The translations under genes were made by a program, and so were the position numbers. Below, piece by piece: positions 1-37,346 of a stretch of DNA of 64,000 nt. The stretch is from Laetmonice hystrix (lineage: Eukaryota). The DNA lies in contig OZ249448.1 of assembly GCA_965235115.1 (NCBI GenBank), forward strand, positions 682,001 through 746,000. Direction: 5' to 3'. The notes under the pieces were generated by a model, which was given only the letters and a program-made list of their open reading frames with translations, ran no database searches and had not been told where the DNA came from. Position 1 is the stretch's first letter; each line of letters begins with the position of its first letter.

Positions 1-3000
1 TGACCTTGAAATTACTAAAAGTATATTTGAGCAATCGTGCAATATTTTTACAGGCAGAGTACATTTACCCCTTGACTTTATTTTACTTTCTAGTGACGAC
101 TCCTGGTGGTAAGATAGCTTTAGTAATTAATCTTGAGCATTTAGAAATAGGCAGAATTAATACCCTCCAATACACACGATGATTCTCAGCTTTCCTCTGT
201 TAACTTAGATCACACCTGAAAGTTGTACTTTTCAAAATGTATAACTTTTCCATACATCCATGTATCAATAGCAGTCTATGGGCTCAGAACTGTGTATTTC
301 TGAAAAGGAGATGGAAGAAACTTTAAATGACATAGCTTAAACTATTACGACGTCTGAACCTTACAGCCCACATATTCTGCAATAGCAAGAAAAGGGCGAT
401 CCTTATGGAAAAGCCCTTGTGTTATGAAAGGGAAATGCAAAATGTTCATGCCTAGCAAATGCTTAAAGTTTAATGCTACTCAGTTGTTATCAAATGGTCG
501 CCTTGGACGCTAGCGATATGCTGTATTTCATACAGGATGTCAGGACCCATTCACCGCTACAGAGAATAAGCATGCCAATGGCGGCAAAGCCAATACCGCC
601 AGAACCATGGCTGACTGTAGGACAGCATGTCTGACTTCTGCAGAGCGATGCTATGGATTTGACTTTCAAGCAGGGTTTAGTGGGGCAACATTGTGCTGGC
701 TGTTTTCCAGTGCCAAAGCAAATGAGCTGGTGGATTTGGCTGGAACAACACATTATGAACGTCGTTTTGTGTGTGGTGGATCAGGTTCAGGTGGTGAGCA
801 CAAGGATTCTTTGCCTACCATGCTATGGTAGAACATATCAAGAGAGCTAAACTAGAACTTTCGCTCTAGGCTGTAATTGCTAAAACTATGACTTATGGCA
901 GAGAATGGCCCTCTGACAGTTCTTATGCTTGAAAACATGTCAGGTCATTTCTATGGATATTTGTTGAGCAATCATGGTACGGTCTGGAGATGGTAACCCA
1001 ACATACCACAATCCAGGAACCAAAAGCGATGAATCATGAACACCTGTCCTGGAATCATTTCATTAGAAGCTTGCCTTAAGATGTACGTTTTGCCATGGTG
1101 GCATTGACATTCTACCTGACCTTTACCCAGGCTGCATTGTCAAATTGGCTATCATTCTACTAAACGCTTGAGCTCCTCTTCCTGAAAGCTTTGCACTTTA
1201 ATTTCTATTTCTAGCTGAGCTCAGGTAAGCAGGAATTCAGCCAATGCCAACAGAAGGAAGTGGATTTTAAGTGACAGAGCTGAAAGGATATATCATGGCA
1301 TCTTTGTCAGCTCTTAGGGATCGCTTCTTCAGCACAGCCTCTGAAATAACGTTATATATAAACGTATTGCCATTAATCTAGTTGCATCTGATGAGCACAT
1401 CCTCAACTCTCTTTACATACAAACATGCTCTGGAGGATCTAAAGCTGATAAAGTACTACTGGTAGCGAAAAATAAGGAGTATACTGGTTCGACAGTACAC
1501 GTGATATCAGACAGAATTGAACATTATATTTTAGATATCATTTCCCTTCAAGTGAATCTGCATTAATATATTTGCAACTTCAAGTGTGCAGAGTGTTGTT
1601 TCATACTACTTTCAAGTCATAATGAAACCAAGTCTCTTTTCTGAGGTAGGCTGCGAGAATAACTTCGATGAGACGGCAAGAACGCATTCAGATGGTGGTG
1701 TGTTAAAATCAGATGCCACAACAGTGTCCGCATGCAGAACTGCCTGCATATCAGCAAATCCCACATGTTATGGATATGACATTGTAAGGAGTGGCACCAC
1801 TATTCAATGTTGGCTGAATTCGAATAAAGATGCATTGAATAACCTAAAACCCATGGATACTGCCACAAACTACAAGAGAAAATGTGCAGGCCAAACTGGA
1901 GGTAAGAGGTTTTTGCCATAAAACATGGAAATGTCGTACCTACTCTATTCAGCATTGGAACACTGAAGCACATCTAGGGACATGTATCCTGTCTTGGCAC
2001 GGGTGACCTTGAAATTACTAAAAGTATATTTGAGCAATCGTGCAATATTTTTACAGGCAGAGTACATTTACCCCTTGACTTTATTTTACTTTCTAGTGAC
2101 GACTCCTGGTGGTAAGATAGCTTTAGTAATTAATCTTGAGCATTTAGAAATAGGCAGAATTAATACCCTCCAATACACACGATGATTCTCAGCTTTCCTC
2201 TGTTAACTTAGATCACACCTGAAAGTTGTACTTTCCAAAATGTATAACTTTTCCATACATCCATGTATCAATAGCAGTCTATGGGCTCAGAACTGTGTAT
2301 TTCTGAAAAGGAGATGGAAGAAACTTTAAATGACATAGTTTAAACTATTACGACGTCTGAACCTTACAGCCCACATATTCTGCAATAGCAAGAAAAGGGC
2401 GATCCTTATGGAAAAGCCCTTGTGTTATGAAAGGGAAATCCAAAATGTTCATGCCTAGCAAATGCTTAAAGTTTAATGCTACTCAGTTGTTATCAAATGG
2501 TCGCCTTGGACGCTAGCGATATGCTGTATTTCATACAGGATGTCAGGACCCATTCACCGCTACAGAGAATAAGCATGCCAATGGCGGCAAAGCCAATACC
2601 GCCAGAACCATGGCTGACTGTAGGACAGCATGTCTGACTTCTGCAGAGCGATGTTATGGATTTGACTTTCAAGCAGGGTTTAGTGGGGCAACATTGTGCT
2701 GGCTGTTTTCCAGTGCCAAAGCAAATGAGCTGGTGGACTTGGCTGGAACAACACATTATGAACGTCGTTTTGTGTGTGGTGGATCAGGTTCAGGTGGTGA
2801 GCACAAGGATTCTTTGCCTACCATGCTATGGTAGAACATATCAAGAGAGCTAAACTAGAACTTTCGCTCTAGGCTGTCATTGCTAAAACTATGACTTATG
2901 GCAGAAAATGGCCCTCTGACAGTTCTTATGCTTGAAAACATATCAGGGCAATTCTATGGATATTTGTTGTGCAATCATGGTACTGTCTGTAGATGGTAGC

Positions 3001-29563: not shown

Positions 29564-31114
29564 ATGATCACGGGATCAGTGCACGCCATAGCTACGCGGG
29601 GAGGACTCTATAAGTTACTTTGGTTATGTATAATTATAAAGGCAAGCTCCTAAAATAATGTAATTACTGAGAACCACTGATTGGGCCTAAAATATACATG
29701 ATGCAACAAAACGATAAAGATAACATCAAATAAACATATTTCATATAGATTTGTGTGTTTATCGTAGTATACCTAGCCCCAGTCTTGAATGTGCCTAAAC
29801 GGTATAAGTTCATGCAGAGTCTCAAAGATTATGTATCTTTTCCGGAAGGGGGGGAGGCAAAATGCTGGATCTCACCCGGCTTTACTGATGTATTCAAGGA
29901 CCCTCCGGAACTCTAGCCTAGGTGTCATTTTGAGCCGCAACCTTTGCGGGCTTCCTGAATGAGAACTGTCCCTTTGTTGGCGACGTGCACCCTAACATCC
30001 TCTATAATATTAAGCGTTAAGTATATGCCTATAATACCTGAAACCGACTCCAGGGGCAGATCTAGGGTTTATATTCGGGGGGGGGGGGGGGTCCAGCATA
30101 AAAAGGGCAAACAGAGCTATATTCAGGAGGGAGGGGCCCTGCATAAAAAGGGCACATCAAGAAACAGCAATCTTATCACGAAAACGGGGGCATTGAAAGT
30201 CACTTGTCACATTCGGGGAAAATATATCGCAAATTCATTAATTACATGTATCGTTAAGAAACACAAAACTACCATCAAGATCTTTTTTATTATTTTGTTT
30301 TTACTTTTCATACAAATACTTCTAAAAACAGGTTCGGTCACATGGCGTTAAAAACTGGACGGAATGAATTGGTACAGGTATTCAAGTAATTGTACTTAAG
30401 TTGCCTTTCTTATGTACATATTTACATGGGTATACTAGTTGATACCTTGAGCCGCACAGGCTAACATACAAATAATTGTGAATAACAATATGAAAAGGAA
30501 TATAAAAAAAGTACCGTCCAAGAACCTCGACATCCCAGGTGTAAATATAAATAAATGTCGTCACATATTCTTCATGGATTCTACCACTTGAGATTGCTTG
30601 CCTGAATCGCATCCTCACAGCTCGCATTATTCCATAATTTTACGACCACTAATCACTGAATTGCATGGAAAATGGTACAACCGATAAAACTTGATGAATC
30701 TAACGTGTAATGTAACCAATTGGGCCAAGTATATCGAAGGCCAGTCCCCAGTCTGGCCCATGCGTGAACTCAGCCATCCCGACAGCTTGGACGGTACAGT
30801 TCTGTTTCACACCACCCTTGGCTCCAAATTTCTTTGTAATATGTGGAACTTGCAAGGGTCGAGTCGCTAACAAGATCCTTATCAAGATCACCACCCTGAG
30901 GTAGCAGATCTCACACCGTAACACAGGCCCACACTGTCCTTGCCAACATTAACATGTTTAGACGCTGATGGCACCTTCTCAGGGTCAGAAAGAGACGAAT
31001 GCTTCAAAGCGCTGTCCACCTCCCCACAAATTTCAGAAGAAGTCATCCCAACCCGTTGAAGTGCAAAGCGACTGGCCTACAAGATCTACCGAACGAAAAC
31101 ATCCGGCAACTTTC

Positions 31115-31228
31115 TCAGTCTTCATCTTCTTCAGGGGCAGACTCTTTCAGTTTCAGTTCAAAGCATAAACAGTTGATGTTTTCACACTCAGGTATCTGGC
31201 ATTGGCAAGCGCAGTTGAAGTTTCCACA
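31115..31228 (-). CDS. Alternative terminal exon b of the Cys-rich TM gene (paralogous Cys block + short acidic tail)
   Basis: ttttttccag| acceptor, 114 nt. Reads CGNFNCACQCQIPECENINCLCFELKLKESAPEEDED*. Confidence 0.78.
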   Translation of the reverse strand, partial: CGNFNCACQCQIPECENINCLCFELKLKESAPEEDED

Positions 31229-34200
31229 CTGGAAAAAAATAAGTACATCGAGTTATACATTCGTCACCACAATACCTACATAAACGAATCCTCTTAAAAC
31301 TTTGTGGAAAACTCTTTTTTTTAACTCTCACAAGATCTTTTTCCGATTCAAAAATTCTATCTGAATAGGACTTAATTTTAACAAAAGGATTCTTGGAGAA
31401 TTTAATAAATTAATGGAATTTGGAGTATGGAAGCCTTACTATTGACTTAAAATGGGACATGCCCTCGACATGCCCTTAACCAGTGATTGAATGTAATCTC
31501 GAAACCGTAATTGCATACTGAAAGGTGAACATGCAGGTTTGTCTCTATTACCGGGCTACTACGTAACGCAAACTCCAAACAAAATGATCAGAAAAAAACG
31601 AGCTACACGGCATACAATTGAAAATAATATACTTTCGGACTTTTTCATGCAACGTCCAATCAAATGAAACGCAAAAACCTCTACTTCACCACGGCAAATA
31701 CCCTGGCATTAACTATAAAACCTACGGACTATTATTGCATGATCTATGGTACAGTATTTCGCTTCAAATGAAACATAAACTACAATAAACCAGTAAAGTC
31801 CTTTGTAGATTCAACGCAACTAAGCAAATAATCTGAAAATAAAAACAAAGAAACGTCTGCAAAGTAACATTGAACATTATGGGTGATACTTTACATAGAG
31901 GCATTCCAGTGCCAGTGCTGTTCAATTCTACTTTGCTCAAAATGGACTAAAAGCTCTTATCGTTGGGTTTCTGAATTCTGTCGTGTTTGGACTATTTATT
32001 GAAATACACGATTTGCTTGGAATCATGCATGACTGTGTGTGAGGTACAAAAATCCGAATCTGGCATTTGGAGTTACGAGAAACGGTGAGCACGAGCAAGC
32101 AGTGCGAGTGTTGCAGGATACAGAACCATCACAAACTCAACTACATCCATGCTTCATGCAGACTATCACCAACGTTTATCTAAAACCAGAACTTTCCATA
32201 CGATGACATTTACTTGCGAGGGCAGATTTTGTCGTGAAAATCAGGGGTTAACTTCAGTATGGAGCAGCGGCAGCTACAGACGATCCAGTAGTTTGTGGAG
32301 GACCTGGCAGGGGACCCTGAGCTGTGAACATGGCTGATGCATCTTGGTATGCCACAGCCCCACCTGGTGGGGGAATAGGGAGATTACGAGGACCCCCTGT
32401 GCCTTCGTTTAACTGCCCGAGGTGCGGGGGAGGATAGTACCCTGCTGGAGCAGGTCCCCCAAAAGCAGGATTGTATCCGGGGGGATATGAGTTTGGGTAT
32501 CCTGGATAAGGTTCCGTTGGGACAGGGGGATGTTGGGCAGCACCCCCCTTCAGAGAAATCTCAAAGCAGCAGCAGTTGACGGTCTCACATTCCGGAGTGT
32601 TGCACTGACATTGGCAGTCACAACACGCCTAGATAGGAACAAAATAGAAACACAGAGGTTTCAGTGGTTTTCATTCAGGGATACATGTATCAACGGAATA
32701 GTTTACAATTCAGTAGTGAAACGTGATTGATAATTTTGCTGATTCCTGAATAGAAACTTCACGGTTATAACCACACATTTATGTACATTTGATGCTGCCA
32801 AAGGTCAAGAACAAATTATACATTCATGCTGGCAGCTTAAAAATGAAATTCACCGGGACAACTAACATTTCAATCCTAATTGGTGTTATGATCGACCCGA
32901 GAAAAATGTAATCCTTTCTCATTTAGTTTTAATTGGTAAATCATGCCTACAACAGCTTATTAAGTTCTAGGCCTGTTAACATTCCAAAATTTATATTCCC
33001 TGTCTCTAAGAGCTGCAGTTATTGATACATGACTATAATATTTCTATTTTAATAATCCCCTTAAAGTGCTACCAACATCACATAGGCACCTTTACTGATC
33101 TGTTCGCCTAAGAGCTCGACCTCGGCCCCATTAAATTTAAAGCTATTACTTCATTTAGGGTAATACAGAACCACATGGAATTTGGTCATATTCTTGAATG
33201 ACAGGCGGTGATGACTTGTGATACACCAGCTGTGGGTAGACGGGAGGAGGGGGGCAGGTCAGAGCTTTAATGAGGCTGAGGTCGAGCTCTTCTTAGAGCG
33301 AACAAACTACAGATAGATCACTGTGAGTTGTAGATGGGCCCGGTTTTTCTGATAAATTCTCTCAGAAAGTAACATTTGTAAAAAAAATGCTCAAAGACTT
33401 AAAAGTAAAAAAGAAATTGAAAAAGGACAAAATCCAATACTGTGAACAGTAAATACAAAAGGAACACAAACTTGAAACTGCCTATTACGGTTCTACTCAC
33501 ACTCACAGTGGCACATTTTGCTTTGTGACAAGCTGTGTCGCAACAGTCCTGTCCTTCACAACTACAACAGCTTTCTGGCTGGACGGCTAGAACTCCGCCA
33601 GTACATGGCAAACAACTACATTGTCTTTCTGATACAGGGTCTTCATGATTCCAACAAGAACTGCCTTCAAAACACATCGGGCACCTTCTTGAATCTTGGT
33701 CCTGAACTGATCTCAGACAAGACATCCATTCCCAACTGTTCTGCTGGCAGTCCATACAATTCTGTTCACCAATCAATCGAAATCATTGCCGTTTCACGTT
33801 CTAAGCAATGGCAATAGTATTTCTGACTTAGCGTGTGAATTCTACAGAGCCAAATGTTATGTAACAAGGGGTCCGTGTCCTTCATGTGTAACATGTGTAA
33901 GTGTAAAGTCCACAAAAAAAACTTTGCTAATAAAATGTCTGTGTGTAATACACCATTGAAGGTACTTACTCCTATATGAGACGGTCCTTCCTACCTTCTT
34001 TAGAAAGCAGGTAGGAAGGTATTGTGTAAAACTACACAATACCCCCCGTCATTACAATAACTAATTTCTTTCGGATCTTTTGCAACCATTGATCAAATGC
34101 TTCAGAGTCCATACCTACATGAACTGTTCATAATCTACGCTGTGGGAAAGGAAGGGTGATACCAAACAACTCTTCAAGTTCATAAAAAAAAAAATCTGTG

Positions 34201-36503
34201 GCAGAATATTTCATCGCTCTCCAATCATGGCAGACGATATAAAATGAAATTGTCTCATAAACAATATAAACGGCACACAAGTATCTTTCTTCTTAGAAAA
34301 GTTAATGAGCTGTGCCACATAAGTTGTACTTGAAACTCAATTTGTGACAATCTTAATAACATTTCATTTTCTTTACAGTAGTTTTCGTGACCAAAAGGTA
34401 GAACAAGCTACCACCCTATGATTCTACACAAATGTTCTGTTATTTTGATACTTTGGAGTTGACCAAAGTCTCCTAACAACATATCAGACGACATCAACAG
34501 ATGTGAGTGATAAATCAAGTAATTTGTTTTTCAGGATTACAAAGATTTGATTATTTTGAATACTTACATCACACAGTGGCTCCTTGCTGCCACAACATCC
34601 ACCATCAGGGCCAACACAGCACTGACACATGATGATGTCTGCACAGTCCATTTGCTGTCAACAATTAAACAGTTTCATATGTCACACAAATACATGTATG
34701 AAAAAAAAATATCATCATTAAAAGCAGAGGTACACAGGGTACCAAGCCTACCTGTAGACTTTGTACTTTAAAAAGTACTTTGTCTCCATGATGTGTATGT
34801 AATGACATCTTTACTTCCTAACACAAATATCAATAAGGCTGGCCTTAAAAAATTGTTCTAAAGAATTTTCTGGGAAAACTGAAAAAAAAAAATTGAAAAT
34901 GGAAGACGTCTAAAAAAATAATTTCCAACCGCAATGTTTCGAGTCATACGGCCAGATTCTTCGGAACAAGCACTTTTTTTAAGGTCAGCCTAAAACTGAC
35001 TGTTGGGTGCATGAAGATTGAGGTTAAAGAATGATTTAAATCCACCCTGCTCACCCGTCGTGCAGGACAGATGGAATCAAGACAGGCCTCTATGTTAGGC
35101 GATCTGCAGCAGTTGGCACTCTCGGCACATGACACACAACATTCACAACACTGCAGTTCTCCTTCCTTGCCGCACCAAGCACAATTCTCGACACAGATTC
35201 CACGTTGCTGTAAAGTGATCATTTGTAGAGATTAAAACCATAGAATACACAAACTTTATTTGATAAAGTAATGTAAAAAAAAAAGAGGTTCCAGCATGAG
35301 ATCATAATATCACAACATGAACCGGTGTAGTACCAGCGGCAGATTCGAGGGGAGGGGGGAGGGATAACACATTTATCAGATGACAGGCCTAATAAAAACT
35401 TCTGCAGGGCGGCACTTTAACCTTTTTAGTTTATTCCTGGGCAGTTAAAATCGTGGGCACATACCTGCACAACCCCACCCCCCCTCCCAGCGCCAACCTA
35501 GATCCGCCCCAGAGCCCATTGAGCCTGGGATGGCTTAATAATGCTAACTGGTATGTTTTATTATCAAAGACTTTTGCCATATTACTGGGAGATGGACACA
35601 GAGGACAGACTTTCTGGACTTACAAGAAGAACTTGTCGGATGATGATTAGGATGAACATGAGGACCACATAGCCACCGATTGCGATACAGAGTATTGCTG
35701 CGAGAGGAAGGCCTGCTTCACCACTTGGAGTCGGAACTGTGGCTGGGCTCTGTATGGGAATATAAATAATATAGACCCTTTATCTTTGGATCGAGGTAGC
35801 CATTTCATTTCAGAAATACACATGCATACAACAGCTCGCTATTTATAGGCCTCCACCTAGGCTACGGTTGGAGTGTACCGCTGCCGGAATGTACCCCAAG
35901 TCGGAATGAACCGGGGGTTAGTCAGAATGTACCACCCCATGGGTCGCCGCCGCGGTGCTACTGTACTGGTCACACACACTGTACTAACCCTAACCCTAAC
36001 CATATGGGCAGGCGGTCGAAATGGTCCGGCCCTGCAAGCCAGTAGCGTACCCGGGGGGGGGGGGGGGGGGGGGGGGTGCTTTGGGTGCTCAAGCATCCCT
36101 CTCAATTTGCCCAATTTTTTTTTTTTTTTGGTGCGCTTGTTGCCCACAGCCCCCCCTCACAATTTGCAGCGCCTACGACGTTGGTTATTTCCAGCACCCC
36201 CCTGGGTCCAGTTTCTGGGTACGCCACTGCAAGACATACTGTCTTACACTTTGTTCCACTTGTTAGGCCTACAAGTACAACTTCAAATACAAGTTAGGCC
36301 TAACGTTACAACTTACAATTTACATTACAAGTCCGGCAACCCCCTTCTTTAGTACTTTACCTTGCCAGTGCGTGGCAGTGCTTCTGACCATGTTCTGACT
36401 GAGGCCAACAAGTTAGGCCTACCTACAACTTACAAGTTCTTACAGTTGTGTATAACAGTTGTGCAGTCGCACACTACTCGTATAATATACTTACATCTGC
36501 CAT
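31115..36503 (-). CDS. Uncharacterised single-pass membrane protein with Cys-rich cytoplasmic region and two alternative terminal exons
   Basis: Minus-strand exons, all phase 0: 36495-36503 (MAD, in-frame stop 6 nt upstream, gtaagt donor); 35624-35749 (SPATVPTPSGEAGLPLAAILCIAIGGYVVLMFILIIIRQVLL, hydrophobic helix); 35055-35207; 34568-34654; 33507-33578 (or -33761); then either 32254-32628 or 31115-31228. Splice sites are canonical, and about 35 of ~126 residues after the TM helix are Cys. Confidence 0.82.
32254..32628 (-). CDS. Alternative terminal exon a of the Cys-rich TM gene (Cys block + Pro/Tyr/Gly-rich tail with PPGY)
   Basis: ttcctatctag| acceptor, 375 nt open to TGA. Reads ACCDCQCQCNTPECETVNCCCFEISLKGGAAQHPPVPTEPYPGYPNSYPPGY...VAAAAPY*. 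AATAAA on the - strand at 31995-32000. Confidence 0.8.
   Translation of the reverse strand, partial: ACCDCQCQCNTPECETVNCCCFEISLKGGAAQHPPVPTEPYPGYPNSYPPGYNPAFGGPAPAGYYPPPHLGQLNEGTGGPRNLPIPPPGGAVAYQDASAMFTAQGPLPGPPQTTGSSVAAAAPY
33101..33304. repeat. Imperfect inverted repeat (hairpin or degenerate MITE) in an intron of the Cys-rich gene
   Basis: AAGAGCTCGACCTCGGCCCCATTAAA (33110-33135) matches the reverse complement of 33266-33291 with 2 mismatches. Weaker similarity extends outward (TGTTCGC..TAAG). Confidence 0.7.
36040..36229. mobile_element. MITE, 190 bp, same terminal type as 27824-28084
   Basis: CAGTAGCGTACCC ... GGGTACGCCACTG (1 mismatch); flanks CAAGC/CAAGA (4 of 5 match); internal poly-G and poly-T tracts. 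Confidence 0.7.
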
Positions 36504-37346
36504 CCTTTATAATTTACTTTCGTTTTTAGGCGCTGACGACGCCTCGGGCACGCACTGACTGAAGCTGCATGTCTCAACAGATCGGCCGTCCCAACCATCC
36601 GCTCTGAACGCGTCCCGCCGTCAGAACTTTGGCCGGTGTCAGACTGCCTCCGTATCTGAAGGGCTGGAGATTAATTATTGAAACATCTCTTTCGTCTCCT
36701 GGTGAATTCAGCATCAAAGATACAGTAACGGTGACTCGAGATACGGCGTTGTGTTGCCACACAAATGGTTACACCTATTGTCGCTCAACGGGCAGTTGAG
36801 TCGGAGCGAGTGAGTCCTTCCTCTGTGACGGAAGTGGCATAATGTTAGCAGTAGCGTACATAATACTATAGAGCTTCTTAAGCAGTCTGCTTAGAAAAAA
36901 AGGACAAACCGCAAACAAAAGTTCTCCAATTAATCAATTATTTACTTCAGAAACATCCTGCCAGGTAATGCCACCCTGTGACATCCGTCCCTACTTTATT
37001 AGCCAGTAGTAACGTTAGGCCATGTGTACCTGTCACTAGTGTCAGTCACTGTCAGATCTGTCAGTGTCAGTGCAAAATTAATATTGAAATGATATTAAAT
37101 AGATCTTTTGCGGTTCCTTTGAGTATGCTTCACAAAAGCGTGTATTGTTACCACCTAATCATAAGAGCCAGAGGAGAAAAACTTTTGATTTTTCCTTTTT
37201 CTGTTTAATCATAAGTTGTTACACTGCTGTGCCCGTTCTCATGCCGCTGCTTGATGCTTTGGTGAAGGGTTGCATCCTGTTGACCTTTGACCTTTCATCG
37301 TAAAGCAGCTGGGCGTGTACCAGAAAGAGTAAGGTAGGAGAGAAGG
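36504..37346. promoter_or_regulatory. Putative bidirectional promoter between the Cys-rich TM gene and PXMP2
   Basis: The two start codons are divergent and 843 bp apart. The interval is CpG-richer than its surroundings and has an ETS-type CGGAAGT at 36829-36835. Confidence 0.5.

What the first reader, a model, noticed from the sequence alone, without database searches (positions are those of the whole stretch)
31115..32628. Duplicated, mutually exclusive terminal exons switch a PPxY tail for an acidic tail
Exon a (CDCQCQCNTPECETVNCCCFEISLK) and exon b (FNCACQCQIPECENINCLCFELKLK) begin with the same Cys motif, both have strong phase-0 acceptors, and both end in a stop. Exon a continues into ~97 Pro/Tyr/Gly-rich residues containing PPGY, whereas b ends in ESAPEEDED. 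An AATAAA lies between them (31995-32000, - strand). Established: PPxY motifs bind WW domains such as those of Nedd4-family ligases. Inference: alternative splicing/polyadenylation toggles whether this membrane protein recruits a WW-domain ligase while the Cys core is retained.
Basis: partly seen in the sequence, partly recalled or inferred. Interest (0 to 1): 0.7.

Follow-up and report, generated by a model that had tools for sequence, protein, structure and literature searches.

The report
Stop-bearing exon spliced onto its duplicate
A worm-like animal's gene for a cysteine-packed membrane protein has two related copies of its last coding exon; RNA shows the first copy (proline/tyrosine-rich tail, own stop) spliced onto the second, so they are consecutive exons arranged as in human KRAS 4A/4B, and the acidic tail would need the first copy to be skipped, which is not yet seen.

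Summary
Exon a (32628-32254) and exon b (31228-31115) share a Cys motif: 15/27 residues, and exon b's only other match in the 627-Mb genome (E 6e-4). Both are open and both follow AG acceptors in phase 0.

The proposed mechanism does not hold. In the one RNA data set, exon a has a GTAAAT donor 40 nt after its stop. It is spliced across a 985-nt intron (32213-31229) onto exon b in a single contig. That contig, if colinear, ends at about 30272, just after AATAAA 30291-30286. No RNA covers the AATAAA at 31995-32000, which is intronic. The observed mRNA therefore encodes a 334-aa protein with a Pro/Gly/Tyr tail, and exon b is 3'UTR.

Exon b can be translated only if the 415-nt exon a is skipped. 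That keeps the frame and gives 247 aa ending in ESAPEEDED. No such junction was seen. However, divergence between the copies is codon-periodic, which fits a model with one neutral copy poorly (P <= 0.017). Exon b has therefore probably been coding for most of its history.

This is the KRAS exon 4A/4B layout, in a gene with no detectable homologues. WW-ligase recruitment through the single PPGY is untested.

The parts
36495..36660 (-). Exon 1: 5'UTR plus ATG GCA GAT (ATG at 36503-36501), donor gtaagt
   Evidence: RNA contig 27 of X4; sequence
35624..35749 (-). Exon 2 (126 nt): short N-terminal stretch and the single hydrophobic segment LPLAAILCIAIGGYVVLMFILIII followed by R
   Evidence: RNA contig 27; translation
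35055..35207 (-). Exon 3 (153 nt), Cys-rich
   Evidence: RNA junctions
34568..34654 (-). Exon 4 (87 nt), Cys-rich
   Evidence: RNA junctions 34654/35055 and 33761/34568
33507..33761 (-). Exon 5 (255 nt), Cys-rich; donor ACT|gtgagt, phase 0
   Evidence: RNA junction to 32628
32214..32628 (-). Cys motif 32628-32548, Pro/Gly/Tyr tail, stop TGA 32256-32254, then 40 nt of UTR and donor CAA|gtaaat
   Evidence: X4 contig 25 covers 32628-32214 and continues into 31228
31229..32213 (-). Intron 6 (985 nt, GT..AG), placed after the stop codon. It contains the AATAAA at 32000-31995. At least 12 heterozygous SNPs and a 10-nt indel are listed here
   Evidence: Joint 31228/32214 'skips 985, CT..AC' and zero X4 depth in bins 31391-32178
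30272..31228 (-). The b reading frame 31228-31115 is 3'UTR in the observed mRNA. AATAAA at 30291-30286; inferred RNA end about 30272
   Evidence: X4 contig 25 (1372 nt) has 415 + 429 nt laid and 528 nt beyond 30800

Best explanation
This is a seven-exon, minus-strand gene (ATG 36503). It encodes a lineage-restricted single-pass membrane protein whose 192-residue region after the membrane segment holds 44 cysteines.

The C-terminal Cys motif exists twice through an old tandem exon duplication.

Shown: the mRNA present in the one RNA data set includes both exons. It encodes a 334-aa protein with a Pro/Gly/Tyr-rich tail containing one PPGY, and exon b is 3'UTR there.

Inferred: skipping exon 6 joins exon 5 to exon 7 in frame. 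That would give a 247-aa protein with the second Cys motif and the acidic tail ESAPEEDED. This is the arrangement of KRAS exons 4A and 4B (a stop-bearing cassette exon ahead of a homologous constitutive last exon), not a pair of terminal exons chosen by polyadenylation. Because the stop lies only 40 nt before the last junction, the included form would escape junction-dependent mRNA decay by the 50-55 nt rule known from mammals. Whether that rule applies in this animal is not established.
For: RNA structure. X4 contig 27 runs 36660-36495 | 35749-35624 | 35207-35055 | 34654-34568 | 33761-33507 | 32628 onward. X4 contig 25 runs 32628-32214 | 31228-30800 and then 528 nt further. All junctions are GT..AG.

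No RNA depth lies between 31391 and 32178. The inferred end at about 30272 follows AATAAA 30291-30286.

Exon 6 is 415 nt. Exon 5 ends and exon 7 begins in phase 0, so the skipped form is an open 247-aa frame.

In the exon 6-exon 7 mRNA the b frame has a stop 9 codons before the junction and no ATG, so skipping is the only route to translating b.

Constraint on b. Differences between the copies by codon position are 7/8/17. Of 15 conserved codons, 8 differ synonymously. A model in which one copy has been neutral since the duplication gives a joint P <= 0.017 at any divergence. A model in which both copies are constrained gives 0.25-0.75.

The known parallel is stated in PMC5945503.
Against: No exon 5 to exon 7 junction was seen. 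X4 contigs pass the exon 5 donor and the exon 7 acceptor without a branch, so the skipped form is rare or absent in that sample. Contigs drop rare variants, four joints were not displayed, and only one sample was available.

The constraint test rests on 27 codons and assumes equal rates in both copies.

No orthologue could be found to check conservation of b.

A second, more abundant X4 contig enters exon 6 unspliced from 32707. Part of the exon 6-exon 7 RNA may therefore not come from the full-length mRNA.
Confidence: 0.6

Rival explanations
1. Exon b is a relic. It was the ancestral last coding exon (or was alternatively used for a long time) but is now only 3'UTR. The gene makes one protein, the 334-aa form with the Pro/Gly/Tyr tail.
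For: The only RNA evidence shows exon 6 included, with no branch at the exon 5 donor or the exon 7 acceptor. No variant data single out b: 0 listed SNPs in 114 nt is uninformative, since about 1.4 would be expected at the intron rate.
Against: The intact 37-codon frame, in phase with exon 5; 6 of 9 Cys kept; third-position-biased divergence. A copy that has been neutral since the duplication fits poorly (P <= 0.017). Loss of use would have to be recent.
Confidence: 0.3
2. One reading: exon a and exon b are mutually exclusive terminal exons. Exon a ends at a poly(A) site after AATAAA 31995-32000, and exon b is reached by splicing from 33507 to 31228.
For: The AATAAA is present 214-219 nt after the exon 6 donor. 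That donor (CAA|gtaaat) is the only one in the gene without G at +5, so it could sometimes be bypassed.
Against: Exon a and exon b lie in one RNA contig joined by a canonical intron. The RNA run has zero depth from 31391 to 32178. Ending at 31975 would not alter the protein relative to the spliced form.
Confidence: 0.07
3. Chance resemblance between two Cys-rich stretches, or exon b belongs to another gene.
For: The gene is 13% Cys overall, which inflates the similarity of short motifs.
Against: Exon b's only other match in the genome is exon a (E 6.2e-4). Non-Cys residues are shared as well (P-E-C-E, N-C, C-F-E, L-K). Exon b is physically joined to exon a in RNA.
Confidence: 0.03

Closest known systems
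KRAS exons 4A/4B (human and other jawed vertebrates)
   Same: Two homologous exons in tandem encode alternative C-termini. The upstream one carries its own stop; when it is included, the downstream one is present in the mRNA but untranslated. Skipping the upstream exon makes the downstream exon coding (PMC5945503; origin by exon duplication is discussed in PMC9882654).
   Different: Here only the included form has been seen. The protein is an unrelated, homologue-less membrane protein. The copies share only a 27-residue Cys motif, and the tails differ greatly in length (97 versus 9 residues).
Alternative last exons with separate poly(A) sites (for example Cdc42 E6/E7 as described in PMC6411841)
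   Same: Alternative C-terminal peptides from alternative 3' exons.
   Different: That class needs each exon to end its own transcript. Here exon a is spliced onward and shows no RNA 3' end of its own.
Classical mutually exclusive exon pairs from tandem duplication (internal exons of equal length)
   Same: Origin by tandem exon duplication, and retained splice phase.
   Different: The exons differ in length (415 nt versus a terminal exon), they co-occur in one mRNA, and reading is ended by a stop codon rather than by exclusion.
PPxY-bearing membrane adaptors of Nedd4-family ligases (NDFIP, PMEPA1, Commissureless; from my own knowledge)
   Same: A membrane protein with a cytoplasmic Pro-rich tail that contains a PPxY (PPGY).
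   Different: There is only one motif, embedded in a Pro/Gly/Tyr low-complexity tail where one could arise by composition alone. There is no sequence homology, and neither binding nor conservation data exist.

Membership tests
Mutually exclusive alternative terminal exons (ALE with alternative polyadenylation) | The two exons never occur in the same mature mRNA | tested here: not met
   X4 contig 25 joins 32628-32214 to 31228-30800
Mutually exclusive alternative terminal exons (ALE with alternative polyadenylation) | The upstream exon ends at its own poly(A) site | tested here: not met
   AATAAA 31995-32000 exists, but the RNA run has zero depth in bins 31391-32178 and exon a uses a donor at 32214|32213. 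One sample only
KRAS 4A/4B-type stop-bearing cassette exon plus homologous last exon | The two exons are homologous tandem duplicates | tested here: met
   E 6.2e-4 genome-wide, 15/27 aa
KRAS 4A/4B-type stop-bearing cassette exon plus homologous last exon | The upstream exon has an in-frame stop and is spliced to the downstream exon, which is then 3'UTR | tested here: met
   Stop at 32256-32254, donor 40 nt later, joint to 31228
KRAS 4A/4B-type stop-bearing cassette exon plus homologous last exon | Skipping the upstream exon leaves the downstream exon in frame | tested here: met
   Exon 5 ends in phase 0 and exon 7 starts in phase 0; open 247-aa product
KRAS 4A/4B-type stop-bearing cassette exon plus homologous last exon | The skipped isoform is actually produced | tested here: inconclusive
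   No 33507-to-31228 joint among those listed. Contigs show presence only; one sample; four joints not displayed
KRAS 4A/4B-type stop-bearing cassette exon plus homologous last exon | Both copies are kept by selection on the protein | tested here: inconclusive
   Codon-periodic divergence. One copy neutral: P <= 0.017. Both constrained: 0.25-0.75. No orthologues were available to confirm
PPxY adaptor for WW-domain (Nedd4-family) ligases | PPxY or LPxY motif on the cytoplasmic side | tested here: met
   One PPGY at residues 259-262. Topology is inferred from the Arg after the hydrophobic segment
PPxY adaptor for WW-domain (Nedd4-family) ligases | The motif binds a WW domain, or is conserved in orthologues | not testable with these tools
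   No orthologues found. No WW partner sequence was available to the complex tool
I-mfa/MDFI Cys-rich domain (a resemblance recalled from memory) | Match to the Pfam model | tested here: not met
   Exon-by-exon hmmscan at E <= 10 gave no family. The spliced whole protein could not be submitted

The most novel reading that the evidence does not exclude
A lineage-restricted membrane protein with a 44-cysteine (metal-binding or heavily palmitoylated) cytoplasmic domain uses a KRAS-4A/4B-like exon choice, evolved independently. The choice would switch between a PPxY/Tyr-Pro-rich tail that recruits WW-domain ligases (or ALG-2-type partners) and a short acidic tail, so that splicing sets the protein's turnover or sorting.
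Probability: 0.2. Interest if true: 0.5.

Novelty: new member of a known kind. Interest (0 to 1): 0.3.

Why it matters
The finding corrects the gene model. The apparent pair of alternative terminal exons is one stop-bearing penultimate exon followed by the true last exon. An annotator would otherwise either split the gene or call exon b coding in the wrong isoform.

It also adds an invertebrate example, in an orphan gene, of the duplicated-exon layout best known from KRAS 4A/4B. In this layout the downstream copy is coding or UTR depending on a single skipping decision. If the skipped form exists, the gene offers a simple natural test of what a Pro/Tyr tail does for a Cys-rich membrane protein. 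By itself the finding is not surprising to a splicing specialist.

Tried and rejected
- **Homologue searches, all blank.** phmmer of exon 5 against 1.84 billion representatives gave only two spurious repeat proteins. Word-indexed searches with exon 6 and exon 3 found nothing, though they are limited to proteins of similar length. Also blank: Pfam exon by exon, the ESM Atlas features search and PDB sequences.
- **Own genome.** The gene is single-copy; the only other hit is an EGF-repeat gene and is spurious.
- **Rfam.** No family at the locus.
- **RNA runs.** None is on record as RNA, but one of the four runs from the same sample behaved as RNA.
- **Whole spliced proteins.** I did not submit them to any search or fold, because that would have meant typing a long sequence.
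- **Routes to translating b without skipping.** An independent ORF in the exon 6-exon 7 mRNA is ruled out (no ATG, and a stop 9 codons upstream). Readthrough of the TGA meets a TAA two codons later. I saw no plausible phase-0 donor inside exon 6 by eye.
- **Gene conversion.** It does not fit the synonymous differences.

Full report
**1. What is in the sequence**

On the minus strand, 32628-32254 translates to ACCDCQCQCNTPECETVNCCCFEISLK. This is followed by 97 residues rich in Pro (24), Gly (16), Ala (14) and Tyr (8), with one PPGY, and then a TGA stop. The stretch 31228-31115 translates to CGNFNCACQCQIPECENINCLCFELKLKESAPEEDED and a stop. Both follow a pyrimidine tract and AG, and AATAAA lies at 31995-32000 on the minus strand.

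Offset by one codon, the two motifs share 15 of 27 residues and 49 of 81 bases. A six-frame search of the whole 627-Mb assembly with exon b returned only exon b and exon a (E 6.2e-4). The DNA flanks do not align.

**2. The gene**

Upstream exons were read from the sequence and confirmed by RNA.

| Exon | Coordinates | Note |
|---|---|---|
| 1 | 36660-36495 | ATG at 36503 |
| 2 | 35749-35624 | one hydrophobic segment, LPLAAILCIAIGGYVVLMFILIII, followed by Arg |
| 3 | 35207-35055 | Cys-rich |
| 4 | 34654-34568 | Cys-rich |
| 5 | 33761-33507 | Cys-rich |

All of these are in phase 0 with GT..AG introns. The 192 residues after the membrane segment contain 44 Cys. An earlier scan note on the same stretch (s1-330617) reads it the same way. 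The cytoplasmic orientation is an inference from the positive-inside rule.

**3. RNA evidence**

No run is on record as RNA, but four runs from one sample hold the locus. Three of them behave as DNA, with contigs colinear with the genome. The fourth, X4, has contigs that skip exactly the predicted introns, so it is RNA.

- Contig 27 (817 nt) links exons 1-2-3-4-5 and the first 29 nt of exon a.
- Contig 25 (1372 nt, depth 98) covers 32628-32214 and then jumps to 31228-30800. The listed joint is 'from 31228 to 32214, skips 985, CT..AC', which on the minus strand is CAA|gtaaat...ccag|TGT.
- Contig 25 continues 528 nt beyond 30800. If colinear, it ends at about 30272, just after AATAAA 30291-30286.

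So exon a is a penultimate exon. Its stop lies 40 nt upstream of a 3'UTR intron, and exon b opens the true last exon. In this mRNA exon b is untranslated, and the product is 334 aa.

**4.

The proposed mechanism fails, however: the exons are not mutually exclusive and no alternative poly(A) use is seen. Ending at the intronic AATAAA would leave the protein unchanged, because the stop precedes the donor.

Exon b can be read only if exon 6 is skipped:

- In the exon 6-exon 7 mRNA its frame has a stop 9 codons before the junction and no ATG.
- The TGA is followed two codons later by TAA.

Skipping the 415-nt exon joins two phase-0 boundaries and gives an open 247-aa product ending in ESAPEEDED.

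**5. Is exon b still a coding exon?**

Against: X4 contigs run through the exon 5 donor and the exon 7 acceptor without branching, so the skipped form is rare or absent in that sample. Contigs drop rare variants, and four joints were not displayed.

For:

- Differences between the copies fall 7/8/17 on codon positions 1/2/3.
- Of 15 codons with the same residue, 8 differ synonymously, which is about saturation for mostly two-fold sites.
- Six of exon a's nine Cys are kept.
- In simulations where one copy evolves neutrally since the duplication and the other is perfectly constrained, the joint probability of at least 15 identities, no stop and at least 8 synonymous differences never exceeds 0.017 at any divergence.
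- With both copies constrained (omega 0.1-0.2, 0.5-1.2 substitutions per site per lineage; the slowest corner, omega 0.2 at 1.2, gives 0.045) the probability is 0.25-0.75.

This is a 27-codon test that assumes equal rates. I read it as good but not decisive evidence that exon b was translated for most of its history.

Heterozygous variants from the DNA runs do not settle the matter. Twelve SNPs and one indel are listed in the 985-nt intron. None is listed in either coding copy, but for the 114 nt of b alone that is uninformative. Across the gene, 3 of the 40 listed variants are coding (2 synonymous, 1 Lys>Thr).

**6. Identity of the protein**

No homologue was found. The searches were:

- exon 5 by phmmer against 1.84 billion representatives;
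- exons 6 and 3 by the word-indexed search;
- Pfam exon by exon;
- the ESM Atlas;
- PDB sequences.

The gene is single-copy in its own genome. Earlier notes on this genome call it an annelid; I did not test that. The resemblance of the motif's end to the I-mfa domain is from memory and is not supported by Pfam. The tail has one strict PPxY. It also contains YP-rich runs (PYPGYPNSYPPGY) of a kind found in many Pro/Gly/Tyr low-complexity regions. WW-domain binding is therefore possible but is not implied by the sequence.

**7. Comparison with known systems**

The layout matches KRAS exons 4A and 4B. PMC5945503 states that 4A and 4B are not mutually exclusive in the mature mRNA, because 4B is present in both isoforms and is untranslated when the stop-bearing 4A is included. 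PMC9882654 discusses the origin of 4A by exon duplication.

The 40-nt distance from the stop to the last junction is below the 50-55 nt threshold for junction-dependent decay in mammals. That threshold is established knowledge for mammals; its application to this animal is an inference.

**8. Verdict**

The mechanism is corrected to a stop-bearing penultimate exon spliced onto its own duplicate.

- The exon structure is well supported, with about 0.9 confidence.
- A skipped, acidic-tail isoform is plausible, at about 0.55-0.6, but unseen.
- The relic reading stands at about 0.3.
- Ligase recruitment is speculative.

This is a new member of a known kind and of modest interest.

Noticed in passing
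window 32599-32707 (minus strand): RNA contig 26 of X4 (109 nt, depth 53) enters exon a unspliced from the intron and stops abruptly at 32707. The spliced exon 5-exon 6 contig has depth 31.6, and X4 has no depth at 32770-32966. Possibly an internal transcription start giving an exon 6-exon 7 RNA without exons 1-5, or partial pre-mRNA. That RNA would have no long ORF in the exon a frame.
   Followed up: partly
window 1-24000: AATAAA hits recur every 1997-2040 nt on both strands and base composition is flat, indicating a tandem array of about 2-kb units, roughly 12 copies. Each unit holds a 111-aa ORF (for example 1586-1921, plus strand) with a Cys pattern reminiscent of a PAN/apple module. No Rfam family was found.
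   Followed up: partly
window 33100-33345 (intron 5) and 36119-36315 (intron 1): Very high-copy elements, with word depth up to about 1.5e5 in the DNA runs. The first has 26-nt terminal inverted repeats (33110-33135 / 33266-33291, 92% complementary) and many variant joints, and looks like a MITE.
   Followed up: no
window 31446 and 31485-32154: The individual is heterozygous here: a 10-nt insertion (TTAAATTAAG) and at least 12 SNPs in the 985-nt intron between the two exon copies, against none listed in either coding copy.
   Followed up: partly
window ~35985-36005 (minus strand): A short interstitial run of telomere-type repeats (ggttagggttagggttag) lies next to long poly-C and poly-A tracts in intron 1.
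   Followed up: no
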